Origin: Octopus sinensis
Taxonomy: Eukaryota
Assembly (NCBI RefSeq): GCF_006345805.1
Contig: NW_021826175.1
Coordinates: forward strand, 1-13,223
DNA: 13,223 nucleotides
Direction of reading: 5' to 3'
Shown: piece after piece, positions 372-12,506 of the stretch
How the letters are laid out: every line of letters begins with the position of its first letter
How positions within the stretch are numbered: position 1 is the stretch's first letter
Translations under genes and position numbers: made by a program
The notes under the pieces: model-generated
Told to the model about the DNA's origin: nothing
What the model saw: only the letters and a program-made list of their open reading frames with translations
The model's database searches: none

Positions 372-570
372 TATGTGCGCGCGCGCCCGTGTGTGTAAGC
401 ATGTATGTATGTATGTATGTATGTATGTATGTATGTATGTATGTATGCATGTATGTATGTGCATATATATATATATAGAGCAGAGAGAGAGAGAGAGAGA
501 CAGAGAGAAAGAGAGAGTGAGTGAGTGAGAGGTGGAGGGAGAGAAAGACAGAGAGAAAGGGGAGAGAGAG

Positions 571-649
<79 letters not shown>

Positions 650-659
650 AAGAGAGAGA
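372..659. repeat. Compound microsatellite: (GC)n/(TG)n, (TATG)n, (TA)n, (GA)n, (GAAA)n
   Basis: Direct reading. It accounts for the low-complexity ORFs 258..464, 334..858 and 532..726. Confidence 0.95.
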
Positions 660-1271: not shown

Positions 1272-1308
1272 CGTATATACATACATACATACATACATAC
1301 ATGCATAT
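1272..1308. repeat. (TACA)n microsatellite
   Basis: Direct reading; abuts the SINE head at 1310. Confidence 0.9.
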
Positions 1309-1309
1309 A

Positions 1310-1725
1310 GGCGTATGAGTGACTGTGTCGTAAGTAGCTTGCTTACCAACCACATAGTTCCGGGTTCAGTCCCACTGCGTGGCACCTTGGGCAAATATCT
1401 TCTACTATAGCCTCGGGCCGACCAAAACCTTGTGAGTGGATTTGGTAGAGGGAAACTGAAAGAATCCCGTCGTATATATGTACATATATGTGTGTGTGTG
1501 TGTGTGTGTGTGTATGTTTGTGTGCCTGTGTTTGTCCCCCCAACATCGCTTGACAACCGATGGTGGTGTGTTTACGTCCCCGTAACTTAGCGGTTCGGCA
1601 AAAGAACCGATAGACTAAGTACTAGGCTTACAAAGAATAAATCCTGGGGTCGATTTGCTCGACTAAAGGTGGTGATTCAGCATGGCCACAGTCAAATGAC
1701 TGAAACAAGTAAATGAGTAAAAGAG
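1310..1725 (+). mobile_element. Full-length composite tRNA-derived SINE (family 2) with internal (TA)n(TG)n microsatellite
   Basis: A-box-like TGACTGTGTCG (1320-1330), B-box-like GTTCAGTCC (1364-1372) and CORE-like GGCACCTTGGGCAA. Internal microsatellite ~1472-1525, a 3' module, and a tail GAAACAAGTAAATGAGTAAAAGAG. It aligns end to end with the reverse complement of 11641-12109. Confidence 0.9.
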
Positions 1726-1771
1726 TATACATACAAACATACATACATACATACATACATACATACATACA

Positions 1772-1807
<36 letters not shown>

Positions 1808-2766: not shown

Positions 2767-2873
2767 AAATCAACTCACAAGCCATAGTAGAAAACACTTG
2801 CCCAAAGTTCCTGAGTGACTGAAACCGAAACCATGTGGTTGGGAAGCAAGTTTCTTAACACACAGCCACACCT
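2767..2873 (-). mobile_element. Truncated, diverged family-2 SINE head
   Basis: The reverse complement AGGTGTGGCTGTGTGTTAAGAAACTTGCTTCCCAACCACATGGTTTCGG...TTGGGCAAGTGTTTTCTACTATGG matches the head at ~1316-1440, with a ~20-bp internal deletion. Confidence 0.85.
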
Positions 2874-2905
2874 ACACTTATATATAAATGAAACACGATA
2901 AGTAG

Positions 2906-2906
<1 letters not shown>

Positions 2907-2952
<46 letters not shown>

Positions 2953-2964
2953 CATATATATATA
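2907..2964. repeat. (TA)n microsatellite
   Basis: Direct reading; left boundary of the palindromic insert. Confidence 0.95.
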
Positions 2965-3290
2965 ACAAAATTAGAAAATGGAGAAACATACTTAAATCAA
3001 TAAAGCATCAACTATCAGATGATACCCAATCAATACTTTATTACACCATTACATATCAGTAAAGGCATTATACAAAATATACAGTAAATGTAAATAGACA
3101 AAGAGATATAAGTATAAAATTTCAAATATTTGAAATTTTATACTTATATCTCTTTGTCTATTTACATTTACTGTATATTTTGTATAATGCCTTTACTGAT
3201 ATGTAATGGTGTAATAAAGTATTGATTGGGTATCATCTGATAGTTGATGCTTTATTGATTTAAGTATGTTTCTCCACTTTCTAATTTTGT
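2965..3290. repeat. Long spacerless inverted repeat (palindrome) with 163-bp arms
   Basis: Checked base by base: 2965-3127 is the reverse complement of 3128-3290 at 162/163 positions. The only mismatch is A2978 versus C3277. The centre is TTCAAAT|ATTTGAA with no loop, and the arms are about 76% AT. Confidence 0.97.
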
Positions 3291-3467
3291 AGTATTAATT
3301 TACGGTAATATTATTACCTTTACCCATATAATACAATAGATGAACTGATTGTTTGGCAATTCTTAACATCTATGTATTAGTCTTGTTGGGTACCTATCTA
3401 GCAGTATATTGGATATATGTTATCCCATGGTGCGTTGAATTTTCAACCCATATCTCATTTTATAACC

Positions 3468-3481
3468 TATATATATATATC

Positions 3482-3512
<31 letters not shown>

Positions 3513-3562
3513 TATATATAATATATATATATATACATATACATATATACATATAGATATAT
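3468..3562. repeat. (TA)n-type microsatellite
   Basis: Direct reading. Confidence 0.95.
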
Positions 3563-3566
3563 GATA

Positions 3567-3852
3567 ACGTGACCGACCAGACCATCAGATGTTGCTACAC
3601 ATCGCTGGTCACAATGCATTGTTTTAGCCTTCGAATGACGCCACCCTGCTGGCTAAGCGAGCAGGCCAACAGAAGAAAGAGTGAGAGAAAGAGTGGTGAA
3701 AGAGTTCAGCAGGGATCGCCACCCCCTGCCGGAGCCTCGTGGAGCTTTTAGGTGCTTTTGTCCAATAAACACTCACAACGCCCTGTCTGGGAATTGAAAC
3801 CGCGATCCTACGACCGCGAGTCCGCTGCTCTAACCACTGGGCCATTGCGCCT

Positions 3853-3856
<4 letters not shown>
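3567..3856 (-). mobile_element. tRNA-derived SINE (family 3, 3' module type a)
   Basis: The reverse complement starts GGAGGCGCAATGGCCCAGTGGTTAGAGCAGCGGACTCGCGGTCGTAGGATCGCGGTTTCAATTCCC, with A and B boxes and a tRNA-like head. Its first ~190 nt align with 10995-11187. Confidence 0.9.
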
Positions 3857-3901
<45 letters not shown>

Positions 3902-3907
3902 CACACA
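3857..3907. repeat. (CA)n/(TA)n microsatellite
   Basis: Direct reading. Confidence 0.95.
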
Positions 3908-3911
3908 TTTA

Positions 3912-4040
3912 TATGTGTGTGTGTCTGTCCCCCACCATCACTTGACAACCAATATTAGTGTGTTTACGTCCTCGTAAAATTAGCGGTTCGACAAAAGAGA
4001 ACGATAGAATAAGTATTAGGCTTACAAAGAATAAGCCTGG
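3912..4040 (+). mobile_element. 3'-module fragment of the family-2 SINE
   Basis: TGTCCCCCACCATCACTTGACAACC...TTAGCGGTTCGACAAAAGAG...GGCTTACAAAGAATAAG matches ~1533-1640. Confidence 0.85.
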
Positions 4041-4528: not shown

Positions 4529-4562
4529 ATCATCATCATTATTATTATTATTATTATTATTA

Positions 4563-4595
<33 letters not shown>

Positions 4596-4611
4596 CATTA
4601 TTATTATTATT
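4529..4611. repeat. (ATC)n(ATT)n microsatellite
   Basis: Direct reading. Confidence 0.95.
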
Positions 4612-5144
4612 AAGTGAGAGACCAGTGCATGCCAAAATATACGAAGCCCAATATACCCATCATGACAACCTGTCTGATAAGAGTACACCAGGCACATGCA
4701 TCACAACCATATGTGCGCGACATGGTGATCTCATATCAAGATAAACAGCGCATGACCTTGCAGGTGGGGCCCAGTTAGAATTTTCTTCTTGTTGAGTAGC
4801 CCATCCCGCTCAAAAGGTCCCTGAATAAGGATTGCTTAAGGATGTTGAACAAACCATTCATGTTTCCAAAGGTGAATTATCCAAACCTCTAAGAATTCCT
4901 TTCAACACACGGCTATGATGCCCCACCACTACTTCTGCTCCTGGTCAGAGATGCACATATCGTCAGTCACTAAGGGACATGCTCAACTGGTTAAGGTCAA
5001 ACAACTGACAAGCAAATCTGTGGTATTGAGCAGAATATTTGCTGTAGCCTATCTTTTATACCAAGACAAAACAATGTACATGATAACACTTCCAATCAGT
5101 TAAGATCAGAAGCCATGAGAGCCACTGTCAGGTACTGCATCAGG

Positions 5145-5145
<1 letters not shown>
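4612..5145. mobile_element. ~535-bp unclassified interspersed element embedded in a (TAA)n/(ATT)n tract
   Basis: Complex sequence with sharp boundaries and (ATT)n directly on both sides (4529-4611 and 5146-5193). I see no tRNA A/B boxes, TIRs or meaningful ORF. From memory it resembles an abundant octopus repeat, which is unverified. Confidence 0.6.

Positions 5146-5193
<48 letters not shown>
5146..5193. repeat. (ATT)n microsatellite
   Basis: Direct reading. Confidence 0.95.
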
Positions 5194-6211: not shown

Positions 6212-6319
6212 ATCATCATTTGGTCAGGCTTGCTCAGACATTTTAACCCGCCCACAACAGCCATCTCGGTCCTGCGAAGTCTTCGGCAATGCTTCCAGTT
6301 TCTCTGGTGAGTTGATCTA
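6212..6319 (-). mobile_element. 3' end of an RTE-type LINE (left piece, split by the mariner)
   Basis: The minus strand reads DQLTRETGSIAED, then after a frameshift DRDGCCGRVKM. This resembles the RTE ORF C-terminus YIDQL..DTG...DR..W..RV. It is followed by a short TGATGAT tail. Confidence 0.7.
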
Positions 6320-7206
6320 TGAGGGAGTATCCAAAAGTAACCGGAAACATTCTCTGTGGGACAAGCCTGTTGTAGTTCAGGCTTCCGCCGCTAGAATCCA
6401 CTTGATGCGGCCCTCAATCATCAGTCTGCCGACCGGCGTCTTTGGGTGGTGTCGTACTGCCACGTGGTGCGTCTTTGTTTTGCAGTGCTTTTTCCCTGTT
6501 CGCCGAAGTCTGAAGCAAAAGAATAGCGTGCTTCGGTGAAATTCTGTTTTCTGCTGGAGCAAACAGCGGCCGGAATAGCTGTCATGCTTCAGAAGCTGCT
6601 ACCATGAACAAAACACAAGCTTACGAGTGGTTTCCACGCTTTAGGGATGGTCACTTGTCGCTTAAAAACCGCCCTCGTCCAGGACGACCATTGACCTCCT
6701 GATCGAACGAAAACCTCATGAAAATTCATGAACTGATCCTGGAGGATCGTCACCGAACAATTGGCGAACTTGTTGATATTACTGGTATGTCCTGAAGCTG
6801 CTGCCAACGAATTTTCAGCGAGGAATTGCGAATGAAAAGAGTCGCAGCCAAATTTGTGTCTCGCTTGCTCACGGAAAATCCAAAGCGGTCACGATTGAAT
6901 GAGTGTCACGAACTGAAAAAACAGTTGGAAATTGATCCAGACTCTTTTCCGAAGGTCATCACTGGCGACAAAAGCAGGTGTTACGGAATTTGCAGATGTG
7001 GAAGAGGTGAAGAAAAAAAGAAAACAACGGAGGCATTAGAAGGAATCACTTCGCATGAGTTCCAACACTACTTCGAATAGAGGAAAACGCGTCTGAACCG
7101 ATGCATTGCTTCAAATGGAGATTACTTTGAAAGCGATAAAAGTGTAAACATATAAAAGTGAATAAATAATATTGCAAAATTCCGGTTTCTTTTGGGTACC
7201 CCTCCC
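6318..7206 (+). mobile_element. Internally deleted mariner DNA transposon A
   Basis: Left end TA-TGAGGGAGTATCCAAAAGTAACCGGAA (6318-6346). The right end 7180-7204 reverse-complements to GAGGGGTACCCAAAAGAAACCGGAA, giving a ~26-bp TIR pair. Transposase remnants lie between them. Confidence 0.92.
6510..7140 (+). pseudogene. Mariner transposase pseudogene A
   Basis: Translates as VKFCFLL...YEWFPRFRDG...RPRPGRP...ILEDRHRTIGEL...ELRMKRVAAKFVSRLL...VITGDKSRCYG. At ~6987 it jumps to FADVEEVK...RCIASNGDYFESD. It has in-frame stops, and the second and third catalytic-D regions (HDNA, YSPDLAP-D) are deleted. Includes track ORF 6826..7080. Confidence 0.9.
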
Positions 7207-7232
7207 CAATACATTGGTAGTGTTCAGACGAT

Positions 7233-8742: not shown

Positions 8743-8745
<3 letters not shown>

Positions 8746-8807
<62 letters not shown>

Positions 8808-8957
8808 ATCATCATTATCATCATCATCATTATTGTTGTTGTTGCTGTTGCTGCTGTTATCATTAATTATAAAGTTATTACCTTTCATTCCTGTTAATAA
8901 CGCCATCATCATCGTCATCGCAATCATCACTGTCTTCGCCGTATATTATTATTATTA

Positions 8958-9004
<47 letters not shown>
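8746..9004. repeat. Compound trinucleotide tracts (ATT)n(ATC)n(GTT)n(GCT)n and a second (ATT)n at 8943-9004
   Basis: Direct reading; source of the poly-N, poly-L and poly-I ORFs 8658..8930 and 8713..9042. Confidence 0.95.
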
Positions 9005-9006
<2 letters not shown>

Positions 9007-9151
9007 ATCGTTTGGAGACATCTGCCTGAAAAGATGTGCTGATGTGTATAAAAGAGACGAAAACCTCTTCTATAACAAAAGAACAGTTTATTCAATACCT
9101 GTCATGTCCATGTTGATTAGGTTTGCAAATTTATTTCACACTGCTCTTGGC

Positions 9152-9810: not shown

Positions 9811-9939
9811 ATTCTCTCCCTTTTCTCTCTCTGTTTATTTCTATCTTCTCTCTCTTTTTCTCATTCTCTGTTTTTCTTGCTTACACATATTCTTTCTCAC
9901 CCTCTGTAATACTTCCTCTCTTTTAGTCTATGTCTGTTT

Positions 9940-10027
9940 CTTTCACTCTCTCACTCACTCACTCACTCACTCACTCTCTCAGTCACTCTCTCTCTCCCTC
10001 CTTCTCTCTCCCTCTCCCTCTCTCTCG

Positions 10028-10064
<37 letters not shown>

Positions 10065-10078
10065 ACTCACTCACTCAT
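9940..10078. repeat. (CT)n/(CACT)n microsatellite
   Basis: Direct reading. Confidence 0.95.
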
Positions 10079-10892: not shown

Positions 10893-10994
10893 CGAGATGC
10901 ATTCAAGAAATTTTGAGACTTTTTTATGAGAAGCGGTTGTAACTGTACTAAATTATTGTAATCATAGTATTTTATTATTGTATATGTCATAAGC

Positions 10995-11316
10995 GTAGAG
11001 GTGCAATGGCCCAGTGGTTAGGGCAGCGGACTCGCGGTCGGAGGATCGCGGTTTCGATTCCCTGACTGGGCGTGTGTTGTGTTTATTGACCGAAAACACC
11101 TTAAACTCCACGAGGCTCCGGCAGGGGGTGGTGGCGACCCCTGTTGTACTCTTTAGCCCGAACTTTCTATGACTCTTTCTTCCTGTTTCTTGAGTAACGC
11201 TGCGATGGACTGGCGTCCCATCCAGCTGAGGGGAACACATACGCCATAGAAACCGGGAAACCAGGCCCATAAGCCTGGCTAGGCTTAAAAAGTGCACATG
11301 AATAAATAAATAAATA
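10995..11316 (+). mobile_element. Full-length tRNA-derived SINE (family 3, 3' module type b) with 13-bp TSD
   Basis: A box TGGCCCAGTGG (11007-11017), B box GTTTCGATTCC (11051-11061) and an (AATA)n tail. Perfect TSD ATATGTCATAAGC at 10982-10994 and 11317-11329. Confidence 0.95.
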
Positions 11317-11432
11317 ATATGTCATAAGCAGACCTGCTGACTTTAGTTATTCCAGATTGAAGGAGACAGCTGTGACAGCACTTTGAGCACTCCTTACTAA
11401 ACACGGCTTGTCGCAGGTGACTAGTCAGCGGA

Positions 11433-11894
11433 ATGCAGTCGGGACGTTTCGAAGCTCGCTTTGCAATACGCTCGTGTTGAACTAGACAAAATTGCTACAG
11501 AAACTTATGAAATGCTCCAGACTACATATGGATAAATTGTTTCGTTGGTACAAGAAGTTCAAGGACGGTAGAGAGGAGGTGAGAGACGATGAGAAGTGTC
11601 GGCGTGAAGAAGGATGGATGTCAAAGCATCAGAGCTGATTCTCTTTTACTATTTTACTTGTTTCAGTTACTTGACTACGGCCATGCTGGAGCAACGCCTT
11701 TAGTCGAGCAAATCGACCGCAGGATTTATTCTTTGTAAGCCTAGTACTTATTCTATCGGTCTCTTTTGCCGAACCGCTTATTTACGGGGACGTAAACACA
11801 CCAGCATCGTTTGTCAAGCGATGTTGGTGGGGACAAACACAGACACACAAACACACACACACACACAACACACACAAACACACACACACCACAC

Positions 11895-11950
<56 letters not shown>

Positions 11951-12506
11951 TACGACGGGCTTCTTTCATTTTCCGCCTATCAAATCCACTCACAAGGCTT
12001 TGGTCGGCCCGAGGCTATAGTAGAAGACTCTTGCCCAAGGTGCCACGTTGTGAACTGAACCCGGGACCATGTGGTTGGTAAGCAAGCTACTTACCACACT
12101 GCCACTCCTTGGATGTAGATCGTCGTGTCTGTAAAGACAATAAGCATACAGTTTGGAATTGGTGTGGCAACTGTACAGAAAATTACTCATGGAGATTAGA
12201 ACATTTGCAAAATTTGATTGTTCTCAGAGTGTTTAGTAACGAGCATCCTGATAACAAACCACTTGACAGAGATCGGTATCAATACTGCCCCTCACCCATC
12301 CTACATTCCATGTCTTGCTCCCTGTGACTTTTGGATGTTCCCCAAACTTAAGGAGAACGTCGGGAGCAATAGGTTTGAAGTGAAGGAGGCTGTGACAAGA
12401 ATCTTGGACACCTTCACTTTGGAGGGCTTCGATGGTGCCTCAGCAGTATCTGGAGCGCTACAACAATTGTATTGAAGTCAGAGAATCCTACTTTGAAGGA
12501 GATTAG
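11433..12506 (+). pseudogene. Mariner transposase pseudogene B (interrupted by a SINE)
   Basis: N-terminal part: MQSGRFEARFAI...ATETYEMLQTTYG...FRWYKKFKDGREEVRDDEKC (11433-11640). After the SINE: DRRV-SVKTISIQFGIGVATVQKI, then a deletion at ~12237, then SILITNHLTEIGINTAPHPSYIPCLAPCDFWMFPKLK (YSPDLAPCD motif) and YNNCIEVRESYFEGD*. Confidence 0.9.
11641..12109 (-). mobile_element. Near full-length family-2 composite SINE with internal (TA)n(TG)n microsatellite
   Basis: The reverse complement aligns with 1310-1725 over head, internal microsatellite (~11835-11950), 3' module and GTAAAAGAG tail. The first few head bases are missing and no TSD is visible. Confidence 0.92.

What the first reader, a model, noticed from the sequence alone, without database searches (positions are those of the whole stretch)
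2965..3467. 326-bp spacerless palindrome in an asymmetric fold-back insert between (TA)n tracts
Seen in sequence: the layout is (TA)n, then a 163-bp arm, its inverse with no loop (162/163 identical), 177 bp of further unique sequence (3291-3467), then (TA)n. This looks like a ~340-bp unit whose first 163 bp are mirrored head-on. The near-perfect arms contrast with the visibly decayed transposon fossils nearby, implying recent formation or ongoing arm homogenisation. Established knowledge: long loopless AT-rich palindromes extrude cruciforms and are fragile (human PATRRs). Penelope-like retroelements are known for inverted, asymmetric partial terminal repeats. Long hairpin transcripts are substrates for Dicer and ADAR, and A-to-I editing is extensive in coleoids. 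Inference: this could be the remnant or terminus of an unclassified (TA)n-targeting element that makes fold-back inversions (PLE-like), or a hairpin-RNA source.
Basis: partly seen in the sequence, partly recalled or inferred. Interest (0 to 1): 0.72.

Follow-up and report, generated by a model that had tools for sequence, protein, structure and literature searches.

The report
Young fold-back insertion in octopus (TA)n tract
A real, almost perfect 326-bp AT-rich DNA palindrome sits inside a ~556-bp insertion in a (TA)n tract of an octopus genome; it looks like a single, fairly recent insertion whose copying enzyme turned back on itself, not a demonstrable new genetic system.

Summary
Arms 2965-3127 and 3128-3290 are 163 nt, match at 162 of 163 positions and have no spacer. 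They are followed by 177 bp of unique sequence, and (TA)n lies on both sides.

New here: the block is bracketed by a 41-bp direct repeat, 2924-2964 = 3521-3561 (40/41). Both copies carry the same rare interruption pattern, so this looks like a target-site duplication. A 53-bp TA-rich stretch lies between the unique part and the right copy.

The host is an Octopus or a close relative. The target (TA)n is probably the tail of a SINE.

Best reading (about 0.45): one target-primed, reverse-transcription-type insertion of a ~340-nt non-coding AT-rich template. At the template's end the polymerase folded back and re-copied the first 163 nt. Self-priming of this kind has been proposed for Penelope-like elements, and twin priming is known for LINEs.

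No RT/EN ORF, hammerhead ribozyme, pLTR or second copy was found. Copy number could not be tested, because no cephalopod genome was reachable apart from one 25-kb locus.

Rivals: a later DNA template switch, an assembly artefact, a MITE, a hairpin-RNA gene, captured DNA.

Interest is modest: a PATRR-like, cruciform-prone site of known kind.

The parts
2781..2881 (-). Context: 5' (head) fragment of a tRNA-derived octopus SINE ('SINE-A'). It bounds the locus on the left. 2882-2906 is unique spacer.
   Evidence: BLAST to the other SINE-A copies in the window and to O. bimaculoides copies in L001 at 80-83 % identity.
2907..2964 (+). Left (TA)n tract. Its last 41 bp (2924-2964) are the left copy of the flanking direct repeat and end exactly at the left edge of the insert.
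   Evidence: TRF. Exact 35-bp match 2924-2958 = 3521-3555. 40/41 identity 2924-2964 versus 3521-3561. The 21-mer ACATATACATATATACATATA occurs exactly only at these two places, with 0.00 expected in shuffles.
2965..3127 (+). Left palindrome arm (B'), the reverse complement of 3128-3290. In the best explanation this is the fold-back copy made during insertion.
   Evidence: There is no microhomology at its outer junction: 2964 A faces 3291 A.
3128..3290 (+). Right palindrome arm (B). In the best explanation this is the first 163 nt of the inserted ~340-nt unit.
   Evidence: The single arm difference is at 3277 (C) versus 2978 (A).
3291..3467 (+). Unique part (C) of the inserted unit. It is non-coding and 30.5 % G+C. 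As RNA it is modestly more structured than shuffles, including a small stem-loop GTTGA-ATTT-TCAAC about 20 nt before its end.
   Evidence: No similarity to B, to its complement or to the rest of the window. RNA fold z = -2.5, with 0 of 200 shuffles folding as well. No stop-free stretch longer than 44 codons within the non-microsatellite sequence; the frame continues into the TA tract.
3468..3520 (+). TA-rich 53-bp stretch between the unit and the right copy of the direct repeat. It is either a microsatellite 3' tail of the inserted template or expanded target (TA)n; the two cannot be told apart.
   Evidence: Sequence read directly and alignment of the two flanks.
3521..3561 (+). Right copy of the 41-bp flanking direct repeat (putative target-site duplication).
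3563..3856 (-). Context: tRNA-derived SINE ('SINE-B') on the minus strand. Its 3' end abuts the (TA)n tract, so the target (TA)n is probably this SINE's tail.
   Evidence: 84 % match of 3668-3856 to the SINE-B copy at about 10995-11187. That second copy has a 13-bp TSD at 10982-10994 / 11317-11329. Translations of the SINEs hit only Octopus bimaculoides proteins.

Best explanation
The locus is one fairly recent insertion into a (TA)n microsatellite, probably the tail of an older SINE, in an Octopus genome.

Proposed mechanism: a non-coding, AT-rich template of about 340 nt (3128-3467), possibly with a (UA)n-like tail, was copied into a staggered break whose two nicks lay about 41 bp apart. That stagger gives the flanking duplication 2924-2964 / 3521-3561. 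Copying started at the right-hand nick and ran to the end of the template, which is now the palindrome centre at 3127|3128. There the polymerase did not join the upstream target directly. Either the new strand snapped back and primed on itself, or the second target end primed internally and both products met by an end-to-end template jump. Either way the first 163 nt were copied again in inverse orientation (2965-3127), and the product was then joined to the upstream target without microhomology.

This is target-primed reverse transcription with a 5' fold-back. Related behaviours are proposed for Penelope-like elements (self-priming) and described for LINEs (twin priming, template jumping).

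Shown: the palindrome, the asymmetry, the flanking repeat and the lack of junction microhomology. Inferred: that the repeat is a target-site duplication, that an RNA template and a reverse transcriptase were involved, and that everything happened in one event.

Today the sequence most likely has no function. Physically it is a PATRR-like, cruciform- and hairpin-prone site, and it would yield a long dsRNA hairpin only if it happens to be transcribed.
For: (1) The palindrome is real and spacerless, 162/163.
(2) The whole block 2965-3520 is bracketed by a 41-bp direct repeat, 40/41 identical with a 35-bp exact core. Both copies carry the same three C interruptions. The left copy ends exactly at the insert edge.
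(3) A TA-rich 53-bp stretch lies only on the side expected for a 3' tail.
(4) The palindrome centre coincides with one end of the unit, as expected if a polymerase ran off a template end.
(5) There is no microhomology at the outer junction. This fits template jumping or end joining better than microhomology-mediated DNA template switching.
(6) The arm divergence (1/163) and the repeat divergence (1/41) are compatible with one age.
(7) The same layout, a segment flanked on both sides by the same microsatellite, recurs in the window for a bona fide SINE with (ATAC)n and for two segments with (ATT)n.
(8) The host is Octopus or a close relative. In O. vulgaris, Dong-R4, CR1, RTE, Penelope and thousands of unclassified SINE insertions are reported as recently active (PMC13282606).
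(9) Microsatellite targeting is known for non-LTR elements that encode a restriction-like endonuclease (PMC4640811) and for Naiad PLEs, which prefer (TA)n (PMC8557442).
(10) PLE junction palindromes have been attributed to RT self-priming (PMC3846280). A PLE protein cleaves and extends both target strands and prefers AT-rich DNA (PMC11167929). Twin priming is established for L1 (PMC11702581).
Against: No reverse transcriptase, endonuclease, hammerhead ribozyme, pLTR or poly(A) is present.

No second copy of the unit was found: not in the window, not in a 25-kb O. bimaculoides locus, and not as a 21/25-mer in the metagenome, prokaryote-genome or viral collections. No related protein was found with a six-frame translation. 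None of these searches covers a cephalopod genome, so they are uninformative rather than negative.

A 41-bp TSD is long. The SINE-B copy in the window has 13 bp, and PLEs are reported with 8-10 bp.

L1 twin-priming junctions overlap by 1-10 bp, not 163.

The two copies of the interrupted TA motif could predate the insertion, as an internal duplication within the microsatellite. In that case the TSD argument falls.

The 'tail' cannot be separated from the target (TA)n.
Confidence: 0.45

Rival explanations
1. Two-step origin. The 340-bp unit was already present between the (TA)n tracts. Later a DNA replication or repair error made the left arm: a fork moving leftwards stalled at the hairpin-prone (TA)n, the nascent strand made a U-turn (intra- or inter-strand template switch, or fold-back priming), copied 163 nt of the opposite strand and returned.
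For: Template switching is an established one-step source of perfect inverted repeats and hairpins (PMC5453318; PMC10766183 and PMC8794818, listed). The palindrome centre lies exactly at the border of a (TA)n tract, a plausible replication barrier. Nothing in the sequence proves an RNA intermediate.
Against: It needs two events, plus the coincidence that the U-turn point equals the end of the earlier insertion. The return junction has no microhomology, although such switches usually use a few bases. [quoted passage not shown] The flanking 41-bp repeat still requires an insertion event to explain the unit itself.
Confidence: 0.2
2. Assembly or sequencing artefact, such as a fold-back chimeric long read, a missed hairpin adapter, or a polymerase strand switch in a (TA)n region.
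For: Spacerless perfect palindromes are the signature of strand-switch chimeras. (TA)n tracts are difficult for all sequencing platforms (own knowledge). PLE-type inverted structures are reported to cause problems in whole-genome shotgun assemblies (PMC8557442). No reads were available to check.
Against: The inversion is only 163 bp and is embedded in a collinear sequence that continues into unique DNA on both sides, whereas read-level fold-backs invert everything up to the end of the read (own knowledge). The arms differ at one base. The block is bracketed by a 41-bp duplication of the target, which an artefact would not create. Long microsatellites elsewhere in the window are spanned cleanly.
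Confidence: 0.08
3. DNA transposon. Either a foldback-type element or palindromic MITE (2965-3290) inserted at a TA site in (TA)n, or a 503-bp TIR element.
For: Tc1/mariner elements use TA targets (own knowledge), and two mariner fossils lie in the window. (TA)n offers many TA sites. The outer ends of the 503-bp block share a weak 9/11 inverted match, read from the sequence (arms listed, I3).
Against: The palindrome is followed by AG, not TA, so there is no TA TSD. The asymmetry (177 bp on one side only) does not fit a foldback element. The arms are not built of subrepeats. The arm ends do not resemble the TIRs of the mariner fossil at about 6319-6344 / 7182-7212. The weak 9/11 match is not terminal on the right. 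A 41-bp flanking repeat fits no DNA transposon superfamily (own knowledge of TSD lengths).
Confidence: 0.05
4. Captured foreign DNA at a double-strand break in a fragile (TA)n tract, for example a mitochondrial fragment (NUMT) or extrachromosomal DNA with a hairpin-capped end opened 163 nt from its tip. No transposition machinery is involved.
For: The insert is AT-rich and non-coding. Replication or off-centre opening of a hairpin-capped end gives exactly symmetric palindromes (own knowledge; review PMC7999016). There is no microhomology at the outer junction.
Against: End joining at a break does not usually duplicate 41 bp of target. No tRNA or other RNA gene and no coding signal was found. 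The mitochondrial genome could not be compared here.
Confidence: 0.05
5. A functional hairpin-RNA locus: a source of endo-siRNA or miRNA-like RNAs, or an ADAR substrate maintained by selection.
For: The transcript, if made, would contain a 163-bp perfect stem. Long-hairpin miRNA models give sub-threshold hits because of that shape (MIR841 at 90 bits against a gathering score of 200).
Against: All Rfam hits are far below their gathering scores and belong to unrelated plant or animal families. The arms match no gene or protein that could be a target. There is no evidence of transcription or conservation. The structure is fully explained as a by-product of insertion.
Confidence: 0.03

Closest known systems
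Penelope-like element (PLE) insertions with an inverted copy at the 5' end (Penelope/Poseidon, Naiad)
   Same: The target is an AT-rich or (TA)n microsatellite. An inverted segment abuts the 5' end of the direct copy with a palindromic junction, which has been interpreted as RT self-priming. The insertion is truncated and non-coding (PMC8557442, PMC3846280, PMC11167929).
   Different: There is no RT/GIY-YIG ORF, no hammerhead ribozyme, no direct pLTR and no 30-40-bp 'tail' motif. The inverted piece is a copy of the unit's first 163 nt and lacks the unit's 3' end. The putative TSD is 41 bp rather than 8-10 bp. Naiads are reported as old remnants in cephalopods, whereas this insertion looks young.
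LINE-mediated 5'-inverted insertions (L1 twin priming) and RT template jumping
   Same: The layout is TSD, inverted 5' segment, direct 3' segment, tail, TSD. The second target end is used as a primer, and the junction forms without long homology (PMC11702581; PMC2837659 and PMC2912911, listed).
   Different: In L1 the inverted and direct segments are neighbouring parts of the RNA and overlap or lack 1-10 bp. Here the overlap is the whole 163-nt inverted segment, giving a true palindrome. There is no poly(A) and no known LINE or SINE sequence.
Human palindromic AT-rich repeats (PATRR11, PATRR17, PATRR22)
   Same: Size class: 326 bp here, against about 190, 450 and 600 bp. Other shared features are high A+T (76 %), near-perfect symmetry with no spacer, a non-coding location and expected cruciform or hairpin propensity (PMC1851657; PMC7999016; fold).
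   Different: No sequence relationship is claimed. No instability, polymorphism or translocation is known for this locus. Here the origin is readable from a flanking duplication and an asymmetric unique segment.
Short template-switch mutations (four-point model) that create perfect inverted repeats
   Same: A single polymerase turn-around creates a perfect inverted copy directly next to its source (PMC5453318).
   Different: [quoted passage not shown] Here the inverted copy is 163 bp, the return junction lacks microhomology, and the source is itself an insertion.
Microsatellite-targeting non-LTR retrotransposons (R4/Dong, Hero, Togen) and their non-autonomous partners
   Same: Insertion into a microsatellite, with the same repeat on both sides of the element (PMC4640811). 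Dong-R4 has the most recently active LINE insertions reported in O. vulgaris. The same both-sides layout is seen for a SINE and for two (ATT)n-flanked segments in this window.
   Different: No sequence link to any such element could be tested. A (TA)n specificity is documented here only for Naiad PLEs, not for these LINEs.

Membership tests
Penelope-like elements (EN+ PLE, including Naiad) | ORF with a telomerase-like RT and a GIY-YIG endonuclease, or a clear remnant of one | tested here: not met
   No stop-free stretch longer than 44 codons lies within the non-microsatellite part of 2960-3475. The six-frame translation finds no protein at E <= 10. A non-autonomous derivative would not need an ORF.
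Penelope-like elements (EN+ PLE, including Naiad) | Pseudo-LTRs: a direct repeat of the 3' region formed by partial tandem insertion | tested here: not met
   B versus C and C versus itself give local alignment scores within the shuffle range. BLAST finds no direct repeat inside the insert.
Penelope-like elements (EN+ PLE, including Naiad) | Hammerhead ribozyme motif in the pLTR (canonical clades; absent in Naiads) | tested here: not met
   No hammerhead family appears among the Rfam matches up to E = 10 in 2850-3650, and there is none at gathering score in the window.
Penelope-like elements (EN+ PLE, including Naiad) | Inverted copy abutting the 5' end with a palindromic junction; AT-rich or (TA)n target | tested here: met
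   The head-to-head junction is at 3127|3128 and (TA)n lies on both sides. However, the outer end of the inverted copy is an internal point of the unit, not its 3' end.
Penelope-like elements (EN+ PLE, including Naiad) | Sequence similarity of the unit to the 3' end of an autonomous PLE in the same genome | not testable with these tools
   No cephalopod genome or repeat library is reachable. The only octopus DNA obtained was 25 kb (L001), and it holds no match.
LINE/SINE retroposon inserted by TPRT (with twin priming) | Flanking target-site duplication of variable length | tested here: met
   41-bp direct repeat, 40/41, with its left copy ending at the insert edge. Caveat: it lies in a microsatellite and is unusually long.
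LINE/SINE retroposon inserted by TPRT (with twin priming) | 3' tail (poly(A) or microsatellite) next to the downstream TSD copy | tested here: inconclusive
   A 53-bp TA-rich stretch at 3468-3520 is in the right place but cannot be distinguished from target (TA)n.
LINE/SINE retroposon inserted by TPRT (with twin priming) | Multiple dispersed copies sharing the 3' end, with variable 5' truncation | not testable with these tools
   There is no other copy in the window or in L001. The collections scanned hold no cephalopod genome.
Foldback elements / palindromic MITEs (DNA transposons) | Symmetric element bounded by terminal inverted repeats and a short TSD of fixed length (TA for Tc1/mariner) | tested here: not met
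   The palindrome is flanked by TA on the left but AG on the right. The insert is asymmetric. The arms contain no subrepeats.
PATRR-type cruciform-prone palindromes (a structural class, not a homology family) | Near-perfect spacerless palindrome of a few hundred bp, AT-rich, with an AT-rich centre | tested here: met
   326 bp, 75.8 % A+T, centre TTTCAAAT|ATTTGAAA, hairpin at -191 kcal/mol. The PATRR size range is from PMC1851657.
PATRR-type cruciform-prone palindromes (a structural class, not a homology family) | Demonstrated cruciform extrusion, polymorphism or breakage | not testable with these tools
   This needs plasmid extrusion assays and population or long-read data.
Hairpin-RNA / miRNA gene | Match to a curated RNA family, or evidence of transcription and processing | tested here: not met
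   The best Rfam hit is MIR841 at 90 bits against a gathering score of 200, and the other hits are lower. Expression is not testable here.

The most novel reading that the evidence does not exclude
The 340-nt unit is a member of an unclassified, non-autonomous, (TA)n-targeting retroelement family in octopods. Its partner enzyme (a PLE or a microsatellite-specific LINE) regularly folds back at the template's 5' end. The family would then seed many young, spacerless AT-rich palindromes across the genome. These would be PATRR-like fragile sites and ready-made long dsRNA hairpins in an animal lineage with very heavy A-to-I editing.
Probability: 0.12. Interest if true: 0.6.

Novelty: new member of a known kind. 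Interest (0 to 1): 0.3.

Why it matters
If the reading is right, this locus is a clean natural record of a polymerase fold-back during insertion. Target duplication, tail, template end and inverted re-copy are all still legible because the event is young. Such records help to explain how long perfect palindromes, which are rare and unstable, are born in animal genomes. They also show how microsatellites act as landing pads. The practical value is smaller. The site is a candidate fragile or polymorphic site and a difficult spot for assembly and PCR in octopus genomes. On its own it does not reveal a new mechanism or system.

Tried and rejected
(1) Exact look-ups of three ORFs in or next to the insert, to find the same locus in other assemblies: none is on record.

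(2) Exact 21- and 25-mers from the arm and from the unique part, scanned in the metagenome, prokaryote-genome and viral contig collections: 0 hits in all six scans. These collections are not expected to hold cephalopod DNA, so the result says little.

(3) A concatenated six-frame translation of the insert against the 5.8-billion-protein set: no hit at E <= 10. Translations of the window's abundant SINEs found only three proteins, all from curated protein databases. Raw octopus genomic ORFs therefore appear not to be in that set, and I ran no further search on the insert.

(4) Rfam at gathering score over the window and permissively over 2850-3650: no family reaches its threshold and there is no hammerhead. 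No tRNA was found.

(5) Pfam on neighbouring ORFs and stitched frames: only weak hits, such as HTH_48 at E = 0.026. The mariner nature of the fossil was instead shown by homology search.

(6) Helitron reading (insertion between A and T, 5'-TC, 3'-CTRR with a hairpin): the ends do not fit (read).

(7) Mariner-derived MITE: the arm ends do not resemble the TIRs of the mariner fossil.

(8) Tandem duplication of a ~597-bp block: rejected, because only 41 bp recur.

(9) The NUMT idea could not be tested, as no cephalopod mitochondrial DNA was reachable.

(10) One 25-kb O. bimaculoides locus (L001) was fetched as a sample of host DNA. It confirms the SINE family and so the host, but it is far too small to measure the copy number of the unit.

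Full report
OBSERVATION

The symmetry centre lies between 3127 and 3128. The arms are 2965-3127 and 3128-3290, 163 nt each. They have a single mismatch (2978 A versus 3277 C) and no spacer.

BLAST of the insert against the window returns the inverted self-match at 99.4 % over 326 bp, E = 1.5e-168. As single-stranded DNA the 503-nt block folds at -191 kcal/mol, against -36.7 +/- 4.2 for dinucleotide shuffles (z = -36.8).

The 177 bp that follow (3291-3467) resemble neither arm, nor their complement, nor anything else in the window. TRF places (TA)n at 2907-2964 and 3468-3562. The palindrome is 75.8 % A+T.

It is the only non-microsatellite close inverted repeat in the window and in a 25-kb sample of octopus DNA.

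HOST AND SURROUNDINGS

Translations of the window's two tRNA-derived SINE families hit only Octopus bimaculoides proteins. One of those proteins maps to O. bimaculoides chromosome CM046609.1, and 25 kb around it were fetched as L001. L001 holds several copies of 'SINE-A' that are up to 90 % identical to the window's copies. The window therefore comes from an Octopus or a close relative.

The palindromic block lies between two SINE pieces:
- On the left is the 5' fragment of a minus-strand SINE-A (2781-2881).
- On the right is a minus-strand SINE-B (3563-3856). Its 3' end abuts the right (TA)n tract, so the (TA)n is probably that SINE's tail.

The neighbours are old. SINE copies within the window are 78-86 % identical to each other. 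The two mariner fossils (about 6319-7212, and about 11380-12500 split by a SINE) carry stops, frameshifts and deletions. The stitched translation of the first fossil has relatives that carry mariner transposase domains (PF17906, PF01359), the best 63 % identical.

NEW ANATOMY

The two (TA)n tracts are not just two halves of one microsatellite.
- The last 41 bp before the insert (2924-2964) recur at 3521-3561 with 40/41 identity and a 35-bp exact core.
- Both copies contain the interrupted motif ACATATACATATATACATATA. It occurs exactly at these two places only, with 0.00 expected in shuffles.
- The left copy ends exactly at the left edge of the insert. The right copy is followed within two bases by the SINE-B 3' region.
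- Between the unique segment and the right copy lies a 53-bp TA-rich stretch (3468-3520).

The locus therefore reads: direct repeat, inverted arm B', arm B, unique C, TA-rich stretch, direct repeat. That is the layout of an insertion with a target-site duplication and a tail on one side.

One caveat remains. Because the repeat lies in a microsatellite, an older internal duplication of the motif cannot be excluded.

At the outer junction of B' there is no microhomology: 2964 A faces 3291 A. Only a non-contiguous 3-nt match lies further out.

WHAT IT IS NOT
- No ORF of note. No stop-free stretch longer than 44 codons lies within the non-microsatellite sequence, and no protein relative appears for any frame.
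- No tRNA.
- No Rfam family reaches its threshold, and no hammerhead ribozyme appears even at E <= 10. The sub-threshold hits are long-hairpin miRNA models that merely recognise a long stem.
- No direct repeat inside the unit that could be a pseudo-LTR.
- No TA target duplication around the palindrome alone, since AG follows it.
- No resemblance of the arm ends to the mariner TIRs.
- No Helitron termini.

MECHANISM

Whatever the enzyme, the palindrome centre coincides with one end of the 340-nt unit.

The most economical account is a single insertion event. Staggered nicks about 41 bp apart in the (TA)n tract were followed by priming at the right-hand nick and copying of an AT-rich template to its end. 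A fold-back then re-copied the first 163 nt, either by self-priming of the new strand or by a second primer from the other target end plus an end-to-end jump. The product was joined to the upstream end without homology.

Each step has a precedent in retroelement biology:
- PLE junction palindromes have been attributed to RT self-priming (PMC3846280).
- A purified PLE protein cleaves and extends both strands and prefers AT-rich DNA (PMC11167929).
- Naiad PLEs prefer (TA)n (PMC8557442).
- Non-LTR elements that encode a restriction-like endonuclease often target microsatellites (PMC4640811).
- L1 twin priming yields the layout TSD, inverted 5' segment, direct segment, tail, TSD (PMC11702581).

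Retroelement machinery has been recently active in Octopus: Dong-R4, CR1, RTE, Penelope and thousands of unclassified SINE insertions (PMC13282606).

The window itself shows the same both-sides-microsatellite layout for a genuine SINE with (ATAC)n and for two segments with (ATT)n.

I put this reading at about 0.45. The RNA intermediate, the one-step timing and the TSD status are inferences.

RIVALS
- A later DNA template switch or fold-back priming at the (TA)n barrier could have added the left arm to a pre-existing insertion (about 0.2). It is mechanistically established (PMC5453318). Here, however, it needs two events, an exact return without microhomology, and a much longer inverted tract than the short-range events in that paper.
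- An assembly artefact (about 0.08) fits poorly. The inversion is short and embedded, the arms differ at one base and the target is duplicated. Without reads it cannot be excluded.
- A foldback or MITE transposon (0.05), captured DNA such as a NUMT (0.05) and a selected hairpin-RNA gene (0.03) each fail or lack at least one expected feature.

COMPARISON AND MEMBERSHIP

The locus works like a PLE or LINE 5'-inverted insertion. It looks like a human PATRR in size, A+T content and symmetry: PATRR17, PATRR11 and PATRR22 are about 190, 450 and 600 bp (PMC1851657). A catalogue cited in PMC7999016 counts only 718 near-perfect spacerless palindromes longer than 200 bp in the human genome.

Membership in the PLE family is not established.
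- RT/EN, pLTR and hammerhead were tested and not met.
- The inverted piece lacks the unit's 3' end.
- The putative TSD is four to five times longer than those reported for PLEs.
- The (TA)n-preferring Naiads are described as long inactive in cephalopods.

The defining test for any retroelement family is dispersed copies that share a 3' end. That test could not be run.

LIMITS

The reachable DNA collections (metagenomes, prokaryotic genomes, viral contigs, phages, plasmids, E. coli) contain no cephalopod genome. The six pattern scans, the protein search and the ORF look-ups are therefore uninformative about copy number. L001 is too small to be informative. Whether the unit is single-copy or a family, whether the site is polymorphic and whether it is transcribed all remain open.

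VERDICT

This is a real and striking, but probably ordinary, product of a known class of events: a young insertion with a 5' fold-back in a (TA)n tract, leaving a PATRR-like palindrome. I rate it as a new member of a known kind, with interest about 0.3. The more novel reading is a (TA)n-targeting, palindrome-seeding retroelement family in octopods. It is not excluded (about 0.12) and can be tested with one BLAST against an octopus assembly.

Noticed in passing
window 1277-1805; 4538-5193; 8745-9008: The layout 'segment flanked on both sides by the same microsatellite' recurs. (ATAC)n 1277-1307, SINE-A 1304-1727, (ATAC)n 1727-1805. (ATT)n 4538-4612, a 533-bp non-repeat segment, (ATT)n 5146-5193. 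(ATT)n 8745-8834, about 110 bp, (ATT)n 8944-9008. This suggests that microsatellite-tailed retroposons land in matching microsatellites. (ATT)n is the complement of the (TAA)n that I recall as the target of Dong in Bombyx.
   Followed up: partly
window 10995-11316, with flanks 10982-10994 and 11317-11329: A well-preserved plus-strand tRNA-derived SINE ('SINE-B'). It has an (AATA)n-like tail and a clean 13-bp target-site duplication, ATATGTCATAAGC. It serves as a yardstick for ordinary TSD length at this locus.
   Followed up: yes
window ~6319-7212: An internally deleted mariner fossil with recognisable inverted termini (TGAGGGAGTATCCAAAAGTAACCGG at about 6320-6344, and its imperfect inverse at about 7182-7212). 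The stitched translation hits mariner transposases (PF17906 + PF01359) at up to 63 % identity. Pfam alone barely detects it.
   Followed up: partly
window ~11380-12500: A second mariner fossil: an HTH_48-like N-terminus at about 11470-11620 and a C-terminal part at about 12250-12500. It is split by a minus-strand SINE-A insertion at 11638-12109. The motif GGATGT occurs on both sides and is a possible short TSD.
   Followed up: partly
window 3856-4035: The head of SINE-B (minus strand) runs directly into (CA)n/(TA)n/(TG)n and then into the 3' half of a plus-strand SINE-A (3914-4034). This looks like nested or microsatellite-mediated juxtaposition of two SINEs. The SINE-A family has an internal microsatellite that varies between copies: (TG)n, (AC)n(AT)n, (TGTA)n.
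   Followed up: no
window 2978 / 3277: The only difference between the palindrome arms is a transition: A in the left arm where the right arm implies G. It is a single site, so nothing can be concluded. It is the kind of change A-to-I editing of an RNA template would leave, but it is equally an ordinary mutation or a consensus error.
   Followed up: no
window 477-659 and 9939-10076: Long purine/pyrimidine tracts, (AGAG/AAAG)n of 183 bp and (CTCT/CTCA)n of about 138 bp. They are potential triplex-forming sequences of opposite strand polarity about 9.3 kb apart.
   Followed up: no
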